Below the pieces are notes generated by a model. That model was not told the DNA's origin. It made no database searches and saw only the letters and a program-made list of their open reading frames with translations. Of a DNA stretch of 64,000 bases, positions 613 to 57,596 are shown piece by piece. Position numbers and translations under genes: made by a program. The first letter of the stretch is position 1; the number at the start of each line of letters is the position of its first letter. The stretch lies in the sequence record MK250027.1. One strand, given 5' to 3'.

Positions 613-621
613 CAAAGATAC
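613..621 (-). promoter_or_regulatory. Bacteroidetes-type -7 promoter element GTATCTTTG (host-RNAP, early type)
   Basis: Matches TAnnTTTG; intergenic and pointing at the downstream gene; one of nine GTATCTTTG copies. Confidence 0.7.
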
Positions 622-643
622 ACATTTTGTTTTAAATAAAAAA

Positions 644-2872: not shown

Positions 2873-2925
2873 AACGTATAAGTTTTTTAAAAAATTAATA
2901 ATACTTTATTTAATTTAAACTAATA

Positions 2926-2934
2926 CAAAGATAC
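2926..2934 (-). promoter_or_regulatory. GTATCTTTG promoter element
   Basis: TAnnTTTG match upstream of the 2872 start. Confidence 0.7.
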
Positions 2935-3005
2935 ATAAAATAATTATAATAAAAAAATATAAACTACAAATATAAGTTAATAAATAAGAAAATATTTTAA
3001 TTAAT

Positions 3006-3291
3006 ATGGAAAGATTATATAAAGAATTAATTAAAGATATATCAATAAGTGTAAAGTAGGCAATAGAAGAATCAATAGGTACATTACAAACTGATAATGA
3101 TATAGATATAATATATATATATACGTAATAATATTAATAATTTAGATTTAAGTGAGTTTAATTATGATATATTAAATTATCTGATACCTGATAAAGAAAC
3201 ATTAATTAATACAGTATTATGTAAAATGTCGGTATCTGACGAAACAATTAATAATATAATGTTATAGATAAAAAATAAGTGTAAAAAATAA
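3006..3291 (+). pseudogene. small TAG-recoded gene frameshifted in an (AT)6 run
   Basis: MERLYKELIKDISISVK(TAG)AIEE... reaches TAA at 3126; another frame continues to TAA 3289-3291; adding one AT unit at 3111-3122 would fuse them into 95 aa. Confidence 0.5.
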
Positions 3292-3346
3292 CTTTTTAAC
3301 ATTTTTAGATATATAATAAAAAGATTTTTTCGATTAAATAAGATTT

Positions 3347-5298: not shown

Positions 5299-5315
5299 AT
5301 TATATAATAATGTGT

Positions 5316-5324
5316 GTATCTTTG
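5316..5324 (+). promoter_or_regulatory. GTATCTTTG promoter element
   Basis: TAnnTTTG match upstream of the 5358 start. Confidence 0.7.
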
Positions 5325-9252: not shown

Positions 9253-9330
9253 TGTGTTTAATATTAAAACTTTTTATATTTATTTGTTTTAATAGTAAAG
9301 ACTTTATGTTTCCTAATTAATAAAATAAAT

Positions 9331-9339
9331 GTATCTTTG
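9331..9339 (+). promoter_or_regulatory. GTATCTTTG promoter element
   Basis: TAnnTTTG match upstream of the 9367 start. Confidence 0.7.
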
Positions 9340-11687: not shown

Positions 11688-11719
11688 AAAATATAAAGTT
11701 TTAATATATAAAGATTATT

Positions 11720-23059: not shown

Positions 23060-23136
23060 AAAACGTTAAAAAATACTTTTATTATTTATTTTTGATATAT
23101 TTTCATTAATGTGTTTTCTTATTTCAAATAAATGTT

Positions 23137-23145
23137 GTATCTTTG
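23137..23145 (+). promoter_or_regulatory. GTATCTTTG promoter element
   Basis: TAnnTTTG match upstream of the 23173-26044 operon. Confidence 0.7.
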
Positions 23146-27940: not shown

Positions 27941-27957
27941 TATATAAAGAAATATGT

Positions 27958-27966
27958 GTATCTTTG
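27958..27966 (+). promoter_or_regulatory. GTATCTTTG promoter element
   Basis: TAnnTTTG match; implies the real start of the next gene is ATG 27995. Confidence 0.7.
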
Positions 27967-29005: not shown

Positions 29006-29416
29006 ATGATTTTAACAGAAATAATATCAATAATAGTCTTATTCTATGGAATTCTTATAGGATTCTTTAGCGGAGTTCTTGGTGAAAAAGGAGATAGTGA
29101 AGAATATACATATAAGTTAGGACCTATAGATGATTTATCACCATTATTTAAATGGGGAAATCGTTTTATAATTCCATGTGTATTATTTGCTTCACCAATA
29201 GGTTTTCTTGGAATTCCTTTATTGTATTTAGGCTTATGTATAATTTTCGCATGTTTTGGAATTGATATTTATATATTAAGTGATAATACATTGAATATTA
29301 TAGGACCTTATATATTACTATATTTTATATCATTGATGATAGGATATAGTATAGGATGTTTTGTGACTAAAAAAGTAATATCTAATTTAATAAAGAAATA
29401 TAATCATGAAAAATAA
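29006..29416 (+). CDS. hypothetical multi-TM membrane protein (136 aa)
   Basis: Several hydrophobic segments. Confidence 0.7.
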   Translation: MILTEIISIIVLFYGILIGFFSGVLGEKGDSEEYTYKLGPIDDLSPLFKWGNRFIIPCVLFASPIGFLGIPLLYLGLCIIFACFGIDIYILSDNTLNIIGPYILLYFISLMIGYSIGCFVTKKVISNLIKKYNHEK

Positions 29417-29918
29417 TAAGTTTTATATTATTTTAGGATATAATGCACTTGATGAATCATATTGTGGTTATGTAGAGAATTCATTCTCTATGGGATGTGA
29501 TGATGAGAGAGTACAGTTGTATTCTGTAAGTAAAGGAGATTTTCCGTGGAAGAATCGAGATTTTCCGGAGAGAAAGAAAATAGCAAAGAAATATCTAAAA
29601 GAAAATGGTGGTAGAAAAGCTTCTTTTGCACATGATTATATTCCTGATGCTTATATGAATCCAAATTCTCCAAACCAATGGATTTGGTTTTATTTGCGTG
29701 ATATTGCAGACAATTTGAATAAGAAACATTATAATAATTGTTATTGGCAAGTATTTCGTGTTAACAGTAAACATTGTCCTGTTAATATAGATATGAAAGA
29801 ATATTATAAGATTCTTCATAATAAGAAATATAGAATGACATTAACTAAATATGAAATAAGAAATATTAAATTTACAGTACAAGATCCTTTATTATTAGAC
29901 TTTATACGTAATATTTAA
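29406..29918 (+). CDS. hypothetical protein (170 aa)
   Basis: ORF track. Confidence 0.75.
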   Translation: MKNNKFYIILGYNALDESYCGYVENSFSMGCDDERVQLYSVSKGDFPWKNRDFPERKKIAKKYLKENGGRKASFAHDYIPDAYMNPNSPNQWIWFYLRDIADNLNKKHYNNCYWQVFRVNSKHCPVNIDMKEYYKILHNKKYRMTLTKYEIRNIKFTVQDPLLLDFIRNI

Positions 29919-29930
29919 TATAAAAAATAT

Positions 29931-30209
29931 ACAGTATATAATTTTGTTATCTAAGTACATGATAATAAAATAGTGCATATCTAGTAAGACTATATGTATT
30001 TCAGTAATGGTACTGAAAGTGTTAATCGTTACTCACGAAACAATATAAGAGTTATATGTTATATAGTAAAGACTAATATTGCAAAAGGTTAATACGCATA
30101 TATAACATATATACCATTTGAGATTATGGTGAATAATTGCAATTAGAATGTAACCATAATAATATGGCGGACCAATATAACATTCTGGGTTCGATCCCCT
30201 ATATACTGT
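29931..30209 (+). ncRNA. ~280-nt structured element ending in a tRNA T-arm-like motif
   Basis: ACAGTATATA (29931) / TATATACTGT (30200) terminal stem; GGGTTCGATCCC at 30187-30198; several internal hairpins. Confidence 0.45.
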
Positions 30210-30262
30210 CTAAATAAAAATTAAAAAGATTCATAATTATTTTTTTAATTAAAAAAGAATGT

Positions 30263-30271
30263 GTATCTTTG
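30263..30271 (+). promoter_or_regulatory. GTATCTTTG promoter upstream of a non-coding structured region
   Basis: TAnnTTTG match with no ORF downstream. Confidence 0.65.
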
Positions 30272-30285
30272 TATTGTAAGAAATA

Positions 30286-30411
30286 AAAATAGTGATACAA
30301 CCTATAAGCCATAGGTAACATGAGTTCGGTAACCTCATGGTTCGTAAGTCGTGATAACGAATAGTCTCGGTAATAGTTGAAAAACCTTCATCGGTTATGT
30401 ATCATTATTTA
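30286..30411 (+). ncRNA. multibranch structured ncRNA candidate
   Basis: AAAATAGTGATACA / TGTATCATTATTTT closing stem; hairpins ACCTAT/ATAGGT, CATGAG/CTCATG, TTCGT/ACGAA. Confidence 0.55.
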
Positions 30412-30615
30412 ACATTCATATGAGAATTAACGAAATGTCTCATATGAGCATGAGGAGTATTCCAACGGAACCGGTGTGTTTGGATTTTTAGTTGTGCATT
30501 TTTTTAATCTGACTATATTGTTGAGAAACAATGAAAAAGAAGATACGTCGTCAGTACAAGTCCATATAATAATTTCGAAATAAAAATGGAAACTGTTAAA
30601 AATCGTATCTATTTT

Positions 30616-30713
30616 GGTTATGTTACATAATGGTTAATGAGGTATCTAATTGATATTTTAATATCAATGGAAGAAAGGTATTGCGGTGACGGGTTCGAGT
30701 CCCTCCATAACCA
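30616..30713 (+). tRNA. tRNA-like gene with a hairpin insertion in the anticodon loop (anticodon not assignable)
   Basis: GGTTATG/CATAACC acceptor stem; CAT-AATGGTTA-ATG D arm; GGG-TTCGAGT-CCC T arm; 30-nt loop containing TTGATATT/AATATCAA. Confidence 0.55.
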
Positions 30714-30934
30714 CTCCTTATAATAATGAAAAGGATGCAATTATCTAACATAGATATTATTATAGTATAAGAAATTATGATAATTCTTAAAATGATAATC
30801 AAGAGATTGAAGTAACTAATTAATGTATAGTTACTAAGGCGAAAGTATAACTGCAATTATATTAGTAGTTGGCGTTTAAAAGATTGAAGAAAATTATTTG
30901 CAGATAATTTTTGGATTGATATTAAATGTAAAAA

Positions 30935-31026
30935 TTATAATAGTGTAGCGGGAATGCACGTTCGATGATAAATCGGAAAGGGATTAACGGTATGACGTTA
31001 TTAAGGGTTCGACTCCCTCTTATAAA
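30935..31026 (+). tRNA. atypical class II tRNA-like element (long variable arm, non-canonical anticodon loop)
   Basis: TTATAA/TTATAA acceptor; GTGT/GCAC D stem; TTCGA-TGATAAA-TCGGA; TAACG/CGTTA variable hairpin; AGGG-TTCGACT-CCCT T arm. Confidence 0.5.
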
Positions 31027-31033
31027 CAAATTT

Positions 31034-31188
31034 AAATACATATATTCTCACGAAGAGCGAGTAAGAGAAGGTGAGCAAATTATGTCTAATGTTATAAGTG
31101 ATCATAATAACAGCTAAAACATAACAGAATTATCTTAACGTAGGAGCTGTAAAAGGATGAACGTATGGTAACATCATTATATGTATTT
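31034..31188 (+). ncRNA. structured ncRNA candidate
   Basis: Perfect 11-bp closing stem AAATACATATA/TATATGTATTT; internal TTCTC/GAGAA and other hairpins. Confidence 0.45.
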
Positions 31189-31210
31189 TTATTGAATTTT
31201 TAATTGTTTG

Positions 31211-31292
31211 AAAATAACTTAATATATGTACTACATCAAACTAATGACATATAAAATCAAACCAAGATGATAAGACAGAATTAAGTTATTTT
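31211..31292 (+). ncRNA. small stem-closed RNA candidate
   Basis: Perfect 13-bp stem AAAATAACTTAAT/ATTAAGTTATTTT; internal ATATGT/ACATAT. Confidence 0.35.
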
Positions 31293-31365
31293 TAATTTGT
31301 TTTGTTTATTTTCTAAAAGTCTATAATGGTTTTCATTATAGACTTTTTTATTTAAAATAAAATGT

Positions 31366-31374
31366 GTATCTTTG
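31366..31374 (+). promoter_or_regulatory. GTATCTTTG promoter element
   Basis: TAnnTTTG match upstream of the nadR-pnuC operon. Confidence 0.7.
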
Positions 31375-31414
31375 AAATATAAATTATAAGTAAAATAAAG
31401 TTGAATTATTAATT

Positions 31415-31828
31415 ATGTATTATATAAATCATGAATTAGTTAATGTAGTAGAGATTAATCCTTTTGAAATTGAATCTGGAAACTTTCCAGATGAGATGAT
31501 AACTATAGATGAATTAATAGATAGAATAAAGAATAAGAAACCTATTAAACAAGGTATTAAAATTCATTTTAATATGTATGACATCATTTATGATGTAAAT
31601 TCACATATATTTATGCATGACACATTCATTCATATTCCTACTAATACAAAGATATTTGTAGAATATGATGAGAATTGGGGATGGGAACGTACATTTCTTC
31701 TTATTCCTAATTATTCAGAAAAAATATGGATAGGAGATAATAATGAAGATTGTTGGTGGGATGCTACTCACAATGAAGGTTCTTATTCTTTTGAGATGAA
31801 ATCTTTTATTGAAATAGAAATAGATTAA
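31415..31828 (+). CDS. hypothetical protein (137 aa)
   Basis: ORF track. Confidence 0.75.
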   Translation: MYYINHELVNVVEINPFEIESGNFPDEMITIDELIDRIKNKKPIKQGIKIHFNMYDIIYDVNSHIFMHDTFIHIPTNTKIFVEYDENWGWERTFLLIPNYSEKIWIGDNNEDCWWDATHNEGSYSFEMKSFIEIEID

Positions 31829-31848
31829 TATATTTAAATTTAATAAAA

Positions 31849-33006
31849 ATGAGTAAGAATATAGGAATTTGTTTTGGCGGATATTGTCCAATGCATCAAG
31901 GTCATCTTGATGTTATTATGCGAGCAAAGAAAGAATCAGATATTGTTTATGTTGTTGTATGTGGATATACAGATGAACCACGTGCGAATGAAATAGGTTT
32001 GAATATAAAGCAACGAGAACGACTTATTAGAGAATATTTTAAAGGCGATGAGATTATAAAAGTTGTTACTGTTAATGATACAGAATTAGGTATTGATGAA
32101 AGTATGTCTGAACATAATTGGAAAGTATGGACTGATTATGTGAAGAAACTTATTGTTAACAAAGTTTTAGACCATAAAGATAATTGGCCTTTTACAGTAG
32201 ACGATACTATTAACGCATTTGAGTTGAAACTTACTTTTTATGTTGGCGAGAAGTTTTATGTTAAATCATTAGAGAAATTAAATTATAATGTTGTATTGGT
32301 AGGATATGACAGCAATTCACCTTCTAACAGAAGTAATGATATTTCTGCAACTCTTATACGTCAGAGACCACAACTTTACTGGAATAAGATTGTATCTACA
32401 TTCAAACCAAAACTAACAAAGAAGATTCTTGTATTAGGAACAGCATCAGAAGGCAAATCAACTCTTGTAAAAGATATTGGTAATTATTTTCAGGTTCCAT
32501 ATACTACTGAATTTGGTAGGGATTATATGGCGAAACATTGTATGTTAGATCCAGATATTACAGTAAACGATTTTGTTGAATTCCTTATAGGACAAAGACA
32601 ATATTATTTTGATGCACTTAACAGTGATAAGAATAAAGGTGTTATTATTTCTGATACTGATAATCTCGTTACTCTTATGTATGCGAAGGCATATACAATG
32701 GATAAGAACATGCAGATTACTGAAAAAGAATATAATGATATATTGTTACCACTTGCAAAATCATTGCAGACTAATGTAGATTGGGATGTAATTTATCTTA
32801 TCAAACCACATAATACATTTGTCGATGATGGAACACGTTATATGGAGCAAAGTTCTATTGAAGAACGTATAAAAAATTATCATATTCTTGTTAAATTATT
32901 GGAGGACTTTGATTTACTTCATAAGGTTATAGAACTAGATGGTACATATCTTGAGCATTTTGATTATGTAAAGAATTATATAAATACACTCTATGAAAAG
33001 TATTAA
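31849..33006 (+). CDS. nadR: NadR-like NMN adenylyltransferase / ribosylnicotinamide kinase (no HTH domain)
   Basis: GGYCPMHQGH (HxGH), ISATLIR, P-loop GTASEGKST, EFGR, DTDNLVT, FVDDGTR. Confidence 0.9.
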   Translation: MSKNIGICFGGYCPMHQGHLDVIMRAKKESDIVYVVVCGYTDEPRANEIGLNIKQRERLIREYFKGDEIIKVVTVNDTELGIDESMSEHNWKVWTDYVKKLIVNKVLDHKDNWPFTVDDTINAFELKLTFYVGEKFYVKSLEKLNYNVVLVGYDSNSPSNRSNDISATLIRQRPQLYWNKIVSTFKPKLTKKILVLGTASEGKSTLVKDIGNYFQVPYTTEFGRDYMAKHCMLDPDITVNDFVEFLIGQRQYYFDALNSDKNKGVIISDTDNLVTLMYAKAYTMDKNMQITEKEYNDILLPLAKSLQTNVDWDVIYLIKPHNTFVDDGTRYMEQSSIEERIKNYHILVKLLEDFDLLHKVIELDGTYLEHFDYVKNYINTLYEKY

Positions 33007-47651: not shown

Positions 47652-47660
47652 CAAAGATAC
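47652..47660 (-). promoter_or_regulatory. GTATCTTTG promoter of the R-M-like operon
   Basis: TAnnTTTG match upstream of the helicase. Confidence 0.7.
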
Positions 47661-47680
47661 ATATTATTTTCTAAAATAAA

Positions 47681-56831: not shown

Positions 56832-57265
56832 ATTAAAATTTTGTTTATTAATTTTTTGTTAAATTTTATATTGAATTTCTTAAAATATTTATCTAAGTTA
56901 TTTTTATTAATATTTACGTTTTAATTTGATAATTTAATAACTTATAATATTTATTCAATATAATAATGGATATAAAATAAAAATATCCGTATTAAAGTTT
57001 AACTCAGATTACTTTTTACAAATTATTTATATAATTAAATCACTATATTAAAATTTTGATTTATATATAATTACACTTTTTGTTTTCTAAGTATACTTTA
57101 TTAAAATCTGTTCTTTAAATATAACCATTTTAATTTGGTATGGTTAATTCAGTAGAATTGATTATTATAATTAATTTATTAAGTATTCTGTTATTTAAAT
57201 TATTTATCTAATTATTTATCTATATTAAATTTAGTTAAAATTAAATTTAGTATATTTTAATTAGA

Positions 57266-57538
57266 TTATTTATTATTTTGTGTTTGCTGTTTTTCTTCTT
57301 GTTTCAACATATTATATGCTTTCATAAATTCTATAGTATCATTAGAAAGCTTTGTATTTAACTTTTGATGTATATCTTTTACTTCTACACGTATATCATC
57401 TATAGAATCACGCATAGCAGGTTTAGTTATACAAATATCCCAAATAATAGATCCCAATACAAATATAATAATTAGGATAGAACCTATACAACTAAATGAA
57501 TTATAACATTTTTGAGTTGTCTAATTAGCATTTATCAT
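57266..57538 (-). CDS. TAG-recoded single-TM protein (90 aa, TAG at codon 6)
   Basis: Extends track ORF 57266-57457; TM IGSILIIIFVLGSIIWDICI then coiled coil. Confidence 0.65.
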
Positions 57539-57596
57539 TTTTCATTAAAGTTATTATTTTTAATATATTTTCTCCCACTGTAATAACTTCTTTTAA

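What the first reader, a model, noticed from the sequence alone, without database searches (positions are those of the whole stretch)
29931..31292. 1.4-kb ORF-free island of consecutive structured RNAs
There is no credible ORF between 29918 and 31415. At least six units are each closed by a terminal stem: 6-7 bp acceptor-type stems for the two tRNA-like units (30616-30713, 30935-31026) and 10-14 bp for the others (29931-30209, 30286-30411, 31034-31188, 31211-31292). Further hairpins lie at about 30415-30600 and 30730-30900. A GTATCTTTG promoter sits just before 30286. This looks like a polycistronic ncRNA array, possibly tRNA/anti-defence decoys or unknown RNA classes (inference).
Basis: partly seen in the sequence, partly recalled or inferred. 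Interest (0 to 1): 0.72.

Follow-up and report, generated by a model that had tools for sequence, protein, structure and literature searches.

The report
Non-coding RNA operon in Lak megaphage
A 1.5-kb gene-free stretch of a giant gut phage (Lak) carries its own promoter and terminator and encodes a string of conserved folded RNAs, three of them imitating the top half of a tRNA; none matches a known RNA family and their function is untested.

Summary
The window is Prevotella phage Lak-B4/B7/B8, a 550-kb megaphage. Positions 29919-31414 have no credible ORF under code 11 or TAG=Q, and this is the largest such gap in the window.

A Lak promoter motif sits at 30262-30271 and is the only one of nine copies in the window not followed by an ORF. 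An intrinsic terminator at 31315-31347 closes a transcription unit of about 1.07 kb. The unit holds these modules:
- M1, 30286-30411
- M2a and M2b, 30416-30612
- M3, a tRNA-like element, 30616-30713
- M4, 30714-30933
- M5, a type-II tRNA-Tyr-like element, 30934-31027
- M6, 31034-31188
- M7, a hairpin found only in the B clade

A further RNA with a tRNA-like 3' end (M0, 29931-30209) lies upstream of the promoter.

Comparison with the A/C-clade Lak phages (about 70% identity) shows many compensatory base-pair changes. Folding energies lie well beyond column-shuffled controls for M2a, M4, M5 and M6. Rfam has no family for any module.

The three tRNA-like elements keep the acceptor and T-arm but lack a usable anticodon loop, so they are unlikely to decode. 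My best reading is a polycistronic ncRNA precursor cut at the tRNA-like elements by RNase P and RNase Z. That processing step and any function are inferred, not shown. The RNA evidence is contig-level only.

The parts
29931..30209 (+). M0: 279-nt structured RNA that ends in a tRNA-like T-arm plus an acceptor-like closing stem. It starts 12 nt after the stop of ORF 29406-29918 and lies upstream of the array promoter.
   Evidence: The closing inverted repeat is found and the T-loop at 30188-30198. The fold z-score is -3.95. In the A/C clade the homologue is a cloverleaf-like RNA with an insert of about 170 nt. Acceptor and T-arm pairs change in a compensatory way between clades (read by eye). 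The 5' half is not homologous between clades.
30241..30271 (+). Lak promoter motif: a T-run followed by TGTATCTTTG, which fits the Bacteroidota -7 box TAnnTTTG.
   Evidence: There are 9 copies in the window against 0.27 expected. Eight of the nine lie 27-53 nt upstream of an ATG that opens an ORF of at least 60 aa; this copy has none. It is conserved in all Lak clades. The same block is the only part of the region repeated elsewhere in the genome.
30286..30411 (+). M1: structured module. The conserved core is about 30298-30375 (hairpin 30306-30340 and a UUCGU...ACGAA hairpin). The 13-bp outer closing stem is found only in the B clade.
   Evidence: The fold z-score is -3.92. Four pairs show compensatory changes, and the hairpin exists in three versions (CAUGAG/CUCAUG, CAUAGG/CCUAUG, CAUAAG/CUUAUG). 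The column-shuffle z-score is only -1.9. The module is absent from the natural deletion variant L017.
30416..30500 (+). M2a: two adjacent conserved hairpins, a 10-bp one at 30416-30447 and a nested two-helix one at 30448-30497.
   Evidence: Of 22 pairs, 98.8% are canonical and 6 are compensatory, against 0 in the slid controls. The column-shuffle z-score is -3.0, and the compensatory count exceeds all 150 shuffles. M2 as a whole is 78% identical between clades, against 57-64% at third codon positions of the flanking genes.
30541..30612 (+). M2b: a long hairpin closed by AGAUACG/CGUAUCU. It ends 3 nt before the tRNA-like M3.
   Evidence: There are 13 pairs, 1 of them compensatory (UCCAU/AUGGA against UCUAU/AUAGA), with z -2.6. 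Natural variants L014 and L017 delete only the apical part and keep the stems.
30616..30713 (+). M3: a tRNA-like RNA. It has a 7-bp acceptor, a D-loop with GG, a 6-bp 'anticodon' stem, a 7-nt variable loop, a T-arm and A73. The anticodon loop is replaced by a hairpin-containing 28-nt insert (about 105 nt in the A/C clade).
   Evidence: ARAGORN calls it; Rfam tRNA gives 22.5 bits, below 29. Four of 7 acceptor pairs and 3 of 5 T-stem pairs differ on both sides between clades and stay paired (read by eye). The insert differs in length and sequence between clades. The base at position -1 is U in both clades.
30714..30933 (+). M4: about 220 nt of consecutive hairpins (about five helices) that fill the space between the two tRNA-like elements.
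   Evidence: Of 71 predicted pairs, 94.9% are canonical and 15 are compensatory, against 5 or fewer in the slid controls. The column-shuffle z-score is -6.1, with 15 compensatory pairs against a maximum of 11 in shuffles. Sequence identity is only 63%, about the neutral level.
30934..31027 (+). M5: a type-II (long variable arm) tRNA-Tyr-like RNA. The anticodon loop is UGAUAAA in the B clade and UGGUAAA in the A/C clade. It has G33, C73, an A/U-only acceptor with an A1-A72 mismatch, and a T-stem of 3-4 bp.
   Evidence: ARAGORN calls it; Rfam tRNA gives 23.1 bits, below 29. The cloverleaf has 24 pairs, 98.8% canonical, 6 compensatory, including changes within clades. The column-shuffle z-score is -4.4. 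A canonical tRNA-Tyr(GTA) exists elsewhere in Lak genomes and is unrelated in sequence. M5 is not in the published Lak tRNA table.
31034..31188 (+). M6: a 155-nt unbranched rod-like RNA. It has a terminal stem of 9-11 bp, six inner helices, and strictly conserved internal loops (for example CACGAAGAGCGAG, GAAGGUGAGCAA, ACGUAGGAGCUG).
   Evidence: All 36 pairs are paired in all 10 sequences, and 9 pairs change on both sides; slid controls are 36-52% paired with at most 1 such pair. RNAalifold supports the fold. The column-shuffle z-score is -5.1. It is single-copy in a 553-kb Lak genome.
31211..31292 (+). M7: a hairpin with a 13-bp perfect stem, present only in the B clade.
   Evidence: The inverted repeat is found and the fold z-score is -3.93. 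There is no homologue in A/C-clade loci.
31315..31347 (+). Intrinsic terminator that closes the non-coding unit.
   Evidence: It has a 15-bp stem and a T-run, and it is the only terminator-like site in 29300-31900. The A/C clade has a different hairpin plus T-run at the same place.
31365..31374 (+). The next promoter motif, serving ORF 31415-31828. It marks the end of the island.

Best explanation
The island is a dedicated non-coding RNA operon of Lak megaphages. A standard Lak promoter at 30262-30271 drives a transcript of about 1.07 kb that ends at the terminator 31315-31347.

The transcript alternates two kinds of element. The first kind is structured RNA modules with no known family (M1, M2, M4, M6, and M7 in the B clade). 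The second kind is two tRNA-like elements (M3, M5). A third tRNA-like-ended RNA (M0) sits at the 3' end of the upstream mRNA.

The tRNA-like elements keep the acceptor/T-arm 'top half', which RNase P, RNase Z and the CCA-adding enzyme recognise. They have no usable anticodon loop, so they most likely do not decode.

Inferred mechanism: they act as punctuation. RNase P cuts at their 5' ends and RNase Z or exonucleases trim their 3' ends. This releases the flanking modules as discrete stable RNAs whose new ends lie within 3-6 nt of terminal stems: M2b ends at 30612, M3 spans 30616-30713, M5 spans 30934-31027, and M6 starts at 31034.

What is shown: the anatomy, the conservation, the compensatory pairing, the absence from Rfam, and presence in metatranscriptome assemblies. 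What is inferred: transcription as a single unit, RNase P/Z processing, and any function. A function as sponges or decoys for tRNA-directed host or phage proteins is possible but untested.
For: Identity and ORF status:
- The window is Lak-B4/B7/B8.
- The stretch is ORF-free under both codes.

Transcription signals:
- The promoter motif is enriched and precedes an ORF in 8 of 9 copies; this copy is the exception.
- There is a single terminator.

Conservation:
- The whole block from promoter to M6 aligns between the B and A/C clades at about 70%.
- M2 and M5 are 76-78% identical, against 57-64% at third codon positions of neighbouring genes.

Structure:
- M6 has 36 of 36 pairs kept in 10 sequences, with 9 double changes.
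- M4 has 15 compensatory pairs, M2a has 6, M5 has 6 and M1 has 4.
- Alifold energies against column-shuffled alignments give z -6.1 (M4), -5.1 (M6), -4.4 (M5) and -3.0 (M2a). Compensatory counts exceed all 150 shuffles for M1, M2a, M4, M5 and M6.
- G-U pairs and T-loops fit only the + strand.

tRNA-like, non-decoding nature:
- ARAGORN and Rfam tRNA matches are below threshold.
- M5 has G33 and its base 34 switches between G and A across clades.
- M3's anticodon loop is replaced by inserts of 28 or about 105 nt.
- M0 has 1 nt between the acceptor and D stems, and its loop sequence varies.
- A canonical tRNA-Tyr is present elsewhere.

Modularity:
- A natural variant (L017) lacks M1 and M2a but keeps the rest. 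A matching deletion joint is seen in run X24.

Expression:
- In pig-gut and other gut metatranscriptome assemblies the A-type array lies on contigs with k-mer depth 28-54 (X19) and 52 (X13). The NadR gene next to it is at about 5-6. A DNA-like run is flat at 12-20.
- Devoto et al. 2019 report highly expressed intergenic regions in Lak-A1 (PMC6784885).
Against: - No reads were available, so there are no transcript ends, strand information or processing sites. Contig depth is a poor measure of expression, and in X19 the high-depth contig also covers upstream genes.
- Only two deep clades exist in the collections searched, so most compensatory changes trace to one branch and are not independent events.
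- Structures predicted from the B4 sequence alone are not kept in A1 (33 of 91 changed pairs stay canonical, the chance level). The supported structures therefore come from the alignment itself.
- Several B-clade tRNA-like features look eroded. The M0 T-stem has 3 bp, M3 has a bulged T-stem, and one B variant carries a further mismatch.
- M1 is only weakly supported (z -1.9).
- No CCA is encoded after any tRNA-like element.
- More distant NadR-bearing jumbo phages have no detectable homologue.
Confidence: 0.55

Rival explanations
1. M0, M3 and M5 are real decoding tRNA genes interrupted by the 'enigmatic introns' already reported for Lak tRNAs. The rest of the island is spacer or leader sequence of a tRNA operon.
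For: Devoto et al. report tRNA introns in Lak genomes, inserted after position 37. With its intron option, ARAGORN draws cloverleaves for the A-clade M0 (170-nt intron) and M3 (99-nt intron). M5 carries a GTA anticodon in the A/C clade.
Against: - No consistent 7-nt anticodon loop with U33 can be formed from the exon flanks in both clades.
- The M5 loop has G33 in every sequence, and base 34 differs between clades.
- The local loop of M0 varies (UAUGACU, UAUAAUU, UAUGAUU), and only 1 nt separates the acceptor and D stems.
- The inserts differ completely in length and sequence between clades, whereas the published introns are identical across cohorts.
- Rfam tRNA scores are below gathering.
- None of the three is in the published tRNAscan table.
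- A canonical tRNA-Tyr(GTA) already exists.
- The 'spacers' M2a, M4 and M6 show the strongest covariation.
Confidence: 0.15
2. The island is a decaying remnant of a tRNA cluster or other non-functional DNA, and the hairpins are what AT-rich sequence gives by chance.
For: - T-stems are eroded in B-clade M0 and M3.
- M7 and the M1 closure are clade-specific.
- A natural variant lacks M1 and M2a.
- M4 and M3 are no more conserved in sequence than third codon positions.
- Single-sequence z-scores of M3, M5 and M6 are unremarkable.
Against: - A promoter and a terminator are kept in both clades.
- Long stretches are invariant, for example the 17-nt stretch at the 5' end of M6, in genomes whose neutral sites are near saturation.
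- Compensatory pair counts and alifold energies lie beyond all column shuffles for M2a, M4, M5 and M6.
- All 36 pairs are kept in M6.
- The stretch is present on high-depth contigs of RNA libraries.
Confidence: 0.1
3. The whole transcript of about 900 nt folds as one very large ornate RNA with embedded tRNA-like domains, in the manner of GOLLD or ROOL RNAs of phages. It is not an array of separately released RNAs.
For: The size is similar, the context is a phage, and tRNA-like elements are adjacent or embedded (my own knowledge of GOLLD/ROOL). Structure is dense throughout. Some long-range inverted repeats occur in B4, at 30657-30675/30908-30926 and 31022-31044/31287-31309.
Against: - There is no match to any Rfam family, GOLLD and ROOL included, at E up to 10.
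- The long-range repeats of B4 fall in segments that are not homologous in the A/C clade.
- RNAalifold on the whole unit finds only local helices.
- Each module is closed locally.
- A circulating variant lacks M1 and M2a with the rest intact.
Confidence: 0.1

Closest known systems
Lak phage tRNAs with 'enigmatic introns' and highly expressed intergenic regions (Devoto et al. 2019, PMC6784885)
   Same: Same genomes. The published introns themselves contain a closing stem plus a GGTTCGAnTCC T-arm, that is, a nested tRNA-like element (Table S6). This is the same building block as M0 and M3. The paper notes strong expression of intergenic regions.
   Different: This locus is not in the published tRNA or intron tables. 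The elements here stand alone rather than sitting inside a decoding tRNA. They are interleaved with structured RNAs that are not tRNA-like. The paper did not analyse any intergenic RNA.
Phage T4 tRNA gene cluster with the small stable RNAs RNAC and RNAD
   Same: A phage transcription unit in which tRNA-shaped RNAs and other small stable RNAs of unknown function are made together and matured by host tRNA-processing enzymes. The placement of RNAC/RNAD in the tRNA cluster is my own knowledge. Their unknown function is stated in PMC9697503.
   Different: The T4 tRNAs are functional decoders. Here the tRNA-shaped elements appear non-decoding, and the non-tRNA modules make up most of the unit. No sequence or Rfam relation was found.
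tRNA-like processing signals: MALAT1/mascRNA, MHV68 tRNA-miRNA units, mitochondrial tRNA punctuation
   Same: A tRNA-like fold is used as an RNase P / RNase Z cleavage signal to define the ends of neighbouring RNAs (established knowledge; mitochondrial case reviewed in PMC3790967). M0 directly follows an mRNA, as mascRNA does. M3 and M5 separate structured RNAs.
   Different: Those systems are eukaryotic or mitochondrial. Cleavage is not shown here.
GOLLD and ROOL large ornate RNAs of phages
   Same: Large, densely structured non-coding RNA in a phage genome, associated with tRNA or tRNA-like elements.
   Different: There is no Rfam match. The organisation is modular, a natural deletion variant exists, and no conserved long-range helices were found.
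Canonical tRNA (Rfam RF00005) and tmRNA
   Same: Acceptor stem, T-arm with a UUCGAnU loop, a D-loop with GG, and a long variable arm in M5.
   Different: Scores are below gathering. U33 and a usable anticodon loop are missing. ARAGORN finds no tmRNA, there is no G3-U70 pair, and there is no tag reading frame.

Membership tests
Canonical decoding tRNA (RF00005) | Score at or above the Rfam gathering threshold (29 bits) | tested here: not met
   M3 scores 22.5 bits and M5 23.1 bits. M0 has no match. A-type M5 only gets tRNA-Sec at 18.6 bits, E 1.8.
Canonical decoding tRNA (RF00005) | Acceptor stem of 7 bp stacked on a T-arm with a T54-Psi55-C56 type loop | tested here: met
   All three elements have UUCGAnU loops. 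The M3 acceptor and T-stem keep pairing through 7 double changes between clades. The M5 acceptor is 6 bp plus an A-A mismatch, and its T-stem is only 3-4 bp.
Canonical decoding tRNA (RF00005) | Seven-nucleotide anticodon loop with U33 and an anticodon held constant among relatives | tested here: not met
   M5 has G33 in all sequences, and base 34 is G in the A/C clade and A in the B clade. The M3 loop is replaced by inserts of 28 or about 105 nt. The M0 loop varies or is absent.
Lak 'intron-containing tRNAs' (Devoto et al. 2019) | A decoding tRNA that becomes canonical once an insert after position 37 is removed, with the insert identical across cohorts | tested here: not met
   Removing the inserts does not give a canonical loop in both clades. 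The inserts differ between clades. The loci are absent from Tables S2B and S6.
tmRNA | tRNA-Ala-like domain (G3-U70) plus a tag-peptide reading frame, detectable by ARAGORN or Rfam | tested here: not met
   ARAGORN in -m mode finds none in the B and A loci. There is no Rfam tmRNA match. Acceptor position 3-70 is U-A or C-G in M3 and G-C in M0.
GOLLD / ROOL / other Rfam large RNAs, group I introns, 6S, RNase P, SRP RNA | Match to the family covariance model | tested here: not met
   No family reaches gathering in the whole window. Nothing relevant appears at E up to 10 on 29800-31500 or at E up to 5 on the A-type locus.
RNase P / RNase Z-punctuated polycistronic precursor | Endonucleolytic cleavage exactly at the 5' and 3' ends of the tRNA-like elements | not testable with these tools
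   Only contigs of the RNA runs could be laid, and these cannot show ends. Supporting anatomy only: U at position -1 of M3, and neighbouring modules that end or start 3-6 nt from the tRNA-like elements.
Conserved structured ncRNA (general) | Base pairs maintained by compensatory substitutions beyond chance | tested here: met
   M2a, M4, M5 and M6 are beyond all column shuffles. M1 has more compensatory pairs than any shuffle (4 against a maximum of 3), but its folding energy is only z -1.9. The caveat is that there are only two deep clades.

The most novel reading that the evidence does not exclude
The island encodes previously undescribed RNA classes. These would be (a) 'top-half' tRNA mimics without anticodons, which Lak megaphages deploy both free-standing and nested inside their tRNAs, and (b) at least three new structured RNAs (M2, M4, M6) released from the same precursor. 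Together they would act on the host, for example as sponges or decoys for tRNA-directed defence nucleases or tRNA-modifying toxins, or as scaffolds for phage proteins.
Probability: 0.2. Interest if true: 0.8.

Novelty: new variant of a known kind. Interest (0 to 1): 0.55.

Why it matters
Lak megaphages are the largest phages of the human and animal gut. About 10% of their DNA is non-coding, and the original description noted highly expressed intergenic regions without explaining them.

This locus gives one such region a concrete anatomy: a promoter-to-terminator unit made only of conserved folded RNAs, punctuated by tRNA mimics that cannot decode. If the processing model holds, it would be a bacterial-virus counterpart of tRNA-punctuated RNA maturation. 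It would also link the 'enigmatic introns' of Lak tRNAs to a wider family of tRNA-like elements.

The non-tRNA modules (M2, M4, M6) are candidates for new RNA families. A role in host takeover or counter-defence can be tested with small-RNA sequencing and RNase P assays.

Tried and rejected
- Rfam at gathering and at permissive E-values, on both clades: only sub-threshold tRNA matches and chance miRNA/sRNA hits.
- tmRNA search with ARAGORN: none.
- An SRP-RNA-like reading of the GGAAGG...AGCA stretch in M6: rejected. That stretch pairs elsewhere with 4 compensatory changes, and the hairpin is not kept in the B clade.
- 9/3 or 8/4 'allo-tRNA' geometry for M5 (lead from PMC5389517): checked by eye, and the extra acceptor pairs do not form.
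- Search for more distant homologues, which all found nothing beyond Lak:
  - nhmmer of the array against 32 metagenome loci found through the NadR-like neighbour gave only Lak A/B/C-type loci.
  - Relatives with NadR at about 50% identity have no T-loops or array upstream.
  - The M6 covariance model found one copy in a 553-kb Lak genome and nothing significant in five other jumbo-phage contigs.
  - Exact-motif scans found only Lak contigs in IMG/VR and two chance hits in GC-rich Rhodobacterales genomes.
- Paralogues inside the genome: only the promoter block is repeated.
- Testing B4 single-sequence MFE structures against A1: not conserved. MFE folds of single modules should not be taken as the real structures.
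- RNA runs for the B-type window: none on record.
- Neighbouring proteins: only the NadR-like NMN adenylyltransferase has a family, so they give no functional link to the RNAs.
- A paper look-up for the T4 genome review failed.
Full report
**Identity of the window.** The stretch 29900-31420 is 100% identical, at the same coordinates, to Prevotella phage Lak-B4, B7 and B8 (550-kb megaphages from baboon gut). It is 98.7-99.6% identical to the other B-clade genomes. It is about 74% identical over about half its length to Lak-A1, A2 and C1 from humans. Lak phages read TAG as glutamine (Devoto et al. 2019, PMC6784885), so I checked ORFs under both codes.

**The observation.** Between the stop of ORF 29406-29918 and the start of ORF 31415-31828 there is no ORF longer than 77 aa under table 11 or TAG=Q.
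- With ORFs of at least 100 aa masked, this 1496-nt gap is the largest in the window. The next two are 765 nt (56832-57596) and 474 nt.
- Single-sequence folding is clearly better than shuffles for 29931-30209 (z -3.95), 30286-30411 (z -3.92) and 31211-31292 (z -3.93). It is moderately better for the hairpins at 30416-30500, 30541-30612 and 30807-30933 (z -2.1 to -2.6). It is not better for the two tRNA-like units or the core of 31034-31188.
- ARAGORN calls 30616-30714 and 30934-31027. The Rfam tRNA model scores them 22.5 and 23.1 bits, below its threshold of 29, and nothing else in Rfam matches.
- A third T-loop sits at 30188-30198, directly before the 3' strand of the closing stem of the first unit.

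**Transcription signals.**
- TGTATCTTTG (30262-30271) fits the Bacteroidota -7 box. It occurs 9 times in the window against 0.27 expected.
- Eight copies lie 27-53 nt upstream of an ATG opening an ORF of at least 60 aa. The copy at 30262 is the only one with no ORF behind it.
- The only terminator-like site in 29300-31900 is a 15-bp hairpin plus T-run at 31315-31347 on the + strand. The next promoter copy (31365) follows it and serves ORF 31415.
- The main unit is therefore about 30280-31347. The first unit (29931-30209) lies upstream of the promoter, 12 nt after the preceding stop codon.

**Relatives.** I collected B-type loci (L004-L007, L040, L041) and A/C-type loci (L001-L003, L008, L009, L014, L016-L020, L045) from GenBank phages, IMG/VR and metagenome contigs.
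- The block from the promoter through 31190 aligns throughout at about 70% between clades and 95-99% within clades.
- Identity between B4 and an A-type genome is 78% for M2 (30413-30613), 76% for M5, 69% for M1, 68% for M6, 63% for M4 and 56% for M3.
- Third codon positions of the four neighbouring genes are 57-64% identical.
- M2 and M5 are thus clearly constrained in sequence. M4 is not, which makes its conserved pairing informative.

**Conserved structure.**
- *M6.* A rod of a terminal stem plus six inner helices has 36 pairs, all paired in all 10 distinct sequences. Nine pairs change on both sides. Sliding the partners by 1-3 columns gives 36-52% pairing and at most one such pair.
- *Other modules.* M4 has 71 pairs, 94.9% canonical, 15 compensatory. 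M2a has 22 pairs, 98.8% canonical, 6 compensatory. The M5 cloverleaf has 24 pairs, 98.8% canonical, 6 compensatory. M1 has 20 pairs, 4 compensatory.
- *Null model.* RNAalifold uses covariation when it predicts, so I built a null by shuffling alignment columns within conservation classes, 150 times per module. Observed energies lie at z -6.1 (M4), -5.1 (M6), -4.4 (M5), -3.0 (M2a), -2.6 (M2b) and -1.9 (M1). The number of compensatory pairs exceeds every shuffle for M1, M2a, M4, M5 and M6.
- *Independent events.* Some changes occurred within clades. The M5 anticodon stem exists in four forms: UUCGA/UCGGA, CUCGA/UCGAG, CCCGU/ACGGG and CCCGA/UCGGG. An M1 hairpin exists in three.
- *Caveats.* There are only two deep clades, so most changes come from a single branch. 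Structures predicted from B4 alone are not kept in A1 (33 of 91 changed pairs stay canonical, about chance).

**The tRNA-like elements.**
- *M3.* It has a 7-bp acceptor (GGUUAUG/CAUAACC in the B clade, GUCUGUA/UACAGAC in the A/C clade; four pairs changed on both sides). It has a conserved D-loop with GG, a 6-bp stem in the anticodon-stem position, an invariant 7-nt variable loop, A73, and a T-arm with three pairs changed on both sides. The B-clade T-stem has a bulged C. Where the anticodon loop should be, the B clade has a 28-nt insert whose core is a 7-bp hairpin with a tetraloop. The A/C clade has about 105 unrelated nucleotides.
- *M5.* It is a type-II cloverleaf with a covarying long variable arm. 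Its loop is UGGUAAA (A/C) or UGAUAAA (B), so position 33 is G everywhere and position 34 differs between clades. The discriminator is C. The acceptor is six A-U pairs plus an A-A mismatch, and the T-stem has 3-4 pairs. Lak genomes carry a canonical, GC-rich tRNA-Tyr(GTA) elsewhere that is unrelated in sequence.
- *M0.* In the A/C clade it has an acceptor, a D-arm separated from it by one nucleotide (U or G), a local hairpin whose loop varies between strains, about 165 further nucleotides, a perfect T-arm and an acceptor 3' strand. In the B clade the 5' 90 nt are unrelated and there is no D-arm, but the acceptor and T-arm remain, with two compensatory acceptor pairs.
- *Published tables.* None of the three is in the published tRNAscan table of Lak tRNAs. 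That table lists nothing near 30 kb in B4 or 29-30 kb in A1.
- *Common feature.* What all three share is the acceptor/T-arm half of a tRNA, the part recognised by RNase P, RNase Z and the CCA-adding enzyme (established knowledge). They lack what decoding needs.
- *Link to the published introns.* The published 'introns' of Lak tRNAs also contain a closing stem followed by a GGTTCGAnTCC arm (Table S6). The same building block seems to occur nested in real tRNAs.

**Modularity.**
- One strain (L017, a 60-kb contig) joins the promoter directly to a shortened M2b. It lacks M1 and M2a and keeps M3-M6.
- A matching joint, skipping 296 nt with replaced letters that match the L017 junction, is present in a contig of an independent RNA run (X24).
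- Another strain (L014) lacks only the apical loop of M2b.
- RNAalifold on the whole unit finds only local helices. The long-range inverted repeats in B4 fall in clade-specific sequence.
- This favours an array of separable modules over a single giant fold.

**Expression.**
- No RNA run holds the B-type sequence. For the A-type locus, several runs do.
- Only assembled contigs could be laid, so ends, strand and levels cannot be read.
- In the pig-gut metatranscriptome X19 the array lies on contigs with mean k-mer depth 28-54, against about 6 for the NadR-like gene next to it.
- In X13 (library type not on record) a 1297-nt contig covering the whole array has depth 52 against 2.5-6.6 for its immediate neighbours.
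- In a run that looks like DNA (X27) depth is flat at 12-20.
- This agrees with the remark of Devoto et al. that many Lak intergenic regions are highly expressed (Supplementary Fig. 9 legend). It is not proof for this locus.

**Distribution.**
- Jumbo-phage contigs that share the NadR-like gene at about 50% identity have no array next to it.
- The M6 covariance model finds nothing significant in five such contigs of 165-280 kb, and a single copy in a complete 553-kb A-like genome.
- Exact-motif scans of IMG/VR return only Lak contigs. A scan of bacterial genomes gave two chance hits in Rhodobacterales.
- Within the collections available, the modules are Lak-specific and single-copy.

**Interpretation.** The best-supported reading is a dedicated ncRNA operon. 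The most economical mechanism for its odd composition is punctuation. The tRNA-like elements would be cut out by RNase P and RNase Z, freeing the neighbouring modules. The ends of those modules lie 3-6 nt from the tRNA-like elements and are locked in terminal stems: M2b ends at 30612 and M3 starts at 30616; M5 ends at 31027 and M6 starts at 31034. U precedes M3 in both clades.
- M0, placed right after a stop codon, could define the 3' end of the upstream mRNA in the way mascRNA does for MALAT1.
- These steps are inferences from anatomy.
- Function is open. A redundant, non-decoding tRNA-Tyr look-alike and anticodon-less tRNA tops would suit decoys or sponges for tRNA-directed enzymes. I have no evidence for a target.

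**Comparison and novelty.**
- The nearest described things are the Lak tRNA introns and expressed intergenic regions (same genomes, this locus not analysed).
- Next are the T4 tRNA cluster with RNAC and RNAD of unknown function (PMC9697503; the cluster context is my own knowledge), tRNA-like processing signals in eukaryotes and mitochondria, and GOLLD/ROOL RNAs.
- The locus fails the membership tests for canonical tRNA, tmRNA and every Rfam family.
- I rate it a new variant of a known kind: a phage tRNA-type operon turned wholly non-coding and non-decoding, with candidate new RNA families. Interest is moderate to good. The main weaknesses are the two-clade phylogeny and the lack of end-resolved RNA data.

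Noticed in passing
window 56832-57596 and 2873-3346: These are the next largest stretches without an ORF of at least 100 aa (TAG=Q), at 765 and 474 nt. A promoter-motif copy lies at 2926-2935 on the minus strand. I did not examine them for structure or conservation.
   Followed up: no
L017:3140-3230 (UMGV01073250.1) and the run X24 joint at L009 4386/4683: A natural Lak variant joins the array promoter directly to a shortened M2b hairpin and lacks M1 and M2a. A matching junction turns up in an independent RNA-library assembly. In L017 the 72-aa ORF upstream also carries an early TAA stop.
   Followed up: partly
L009:4726-4944 (minus strand) compared with window 30210-30260; window 31415-31828: A/C-clade genomes have a 72-73-aa ORF with no family match between M0 and the array promoter, and the B clade lacks it. 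The B clade has a 137-aa ORF between the array and the NadR-like gene, and the A/C clade lacks it.
   Followed up: partly
G002 (IMGVR_UViG_3300045988_166570) 368296-371144, 375133-376836, 338011-339393, 168334-169391: A complete 553-kb A-like Lak genome has 26 gaps of at least 600 nt without an ORF of at least 100 aa. Several are larger than the one studied here and hold no ARAGORN tRNA. The gap at 168 kb holds an orphan T-loop motif. These are probably more of the 'expressed intergenic regions' of the original paper.
   Followed up: no
G002 positions 11692, 36723, 59546, 315069, 323661, 432697, 432827, 433780: Strict GGTTCGAnTCC T-loop motifs lie outside any ARAGORN tRNA call. This suggests further free-standing or nested tRNA-like elements in Lak genomes.
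   Followed up: no
window 613-622, 2926-2935, 5315-5324, 9330-9339, 23136-23145, 27957-27966, 31365-31374, 47652-47661: The motif TGTATCTTTG, preceded by a T-run about 20 nt upstream, sits 27-53 nt before ORF starts and behaves as the common Lak promoter. There are 55 exact copies in the 553-kb genome G002.
   Followed up: partly
PMC6784885 Supplementary Table S6: The published 'introns' of Lak tRNA-Tyr, Phe, Thr and Gly each contain a 7-bp closing stem followed by a T-arm, so each is itself tRNA-like. The authors noted this only for the Thr intron.
   Followed up: partly
window 30188-30198: B4 (with B7 and B8) has GGTTCGATCCC in the M0 T-loop, where the other B-type loci sampled (L004, L005, L040, L041) and the A/C-type loci have GGTTCGATTCC. 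One B variant (L004) also has a G-to-A change in the M3 T-stem. The tRNA-like elements may be under weaker constraint in the B clade.
   Followed up: partly
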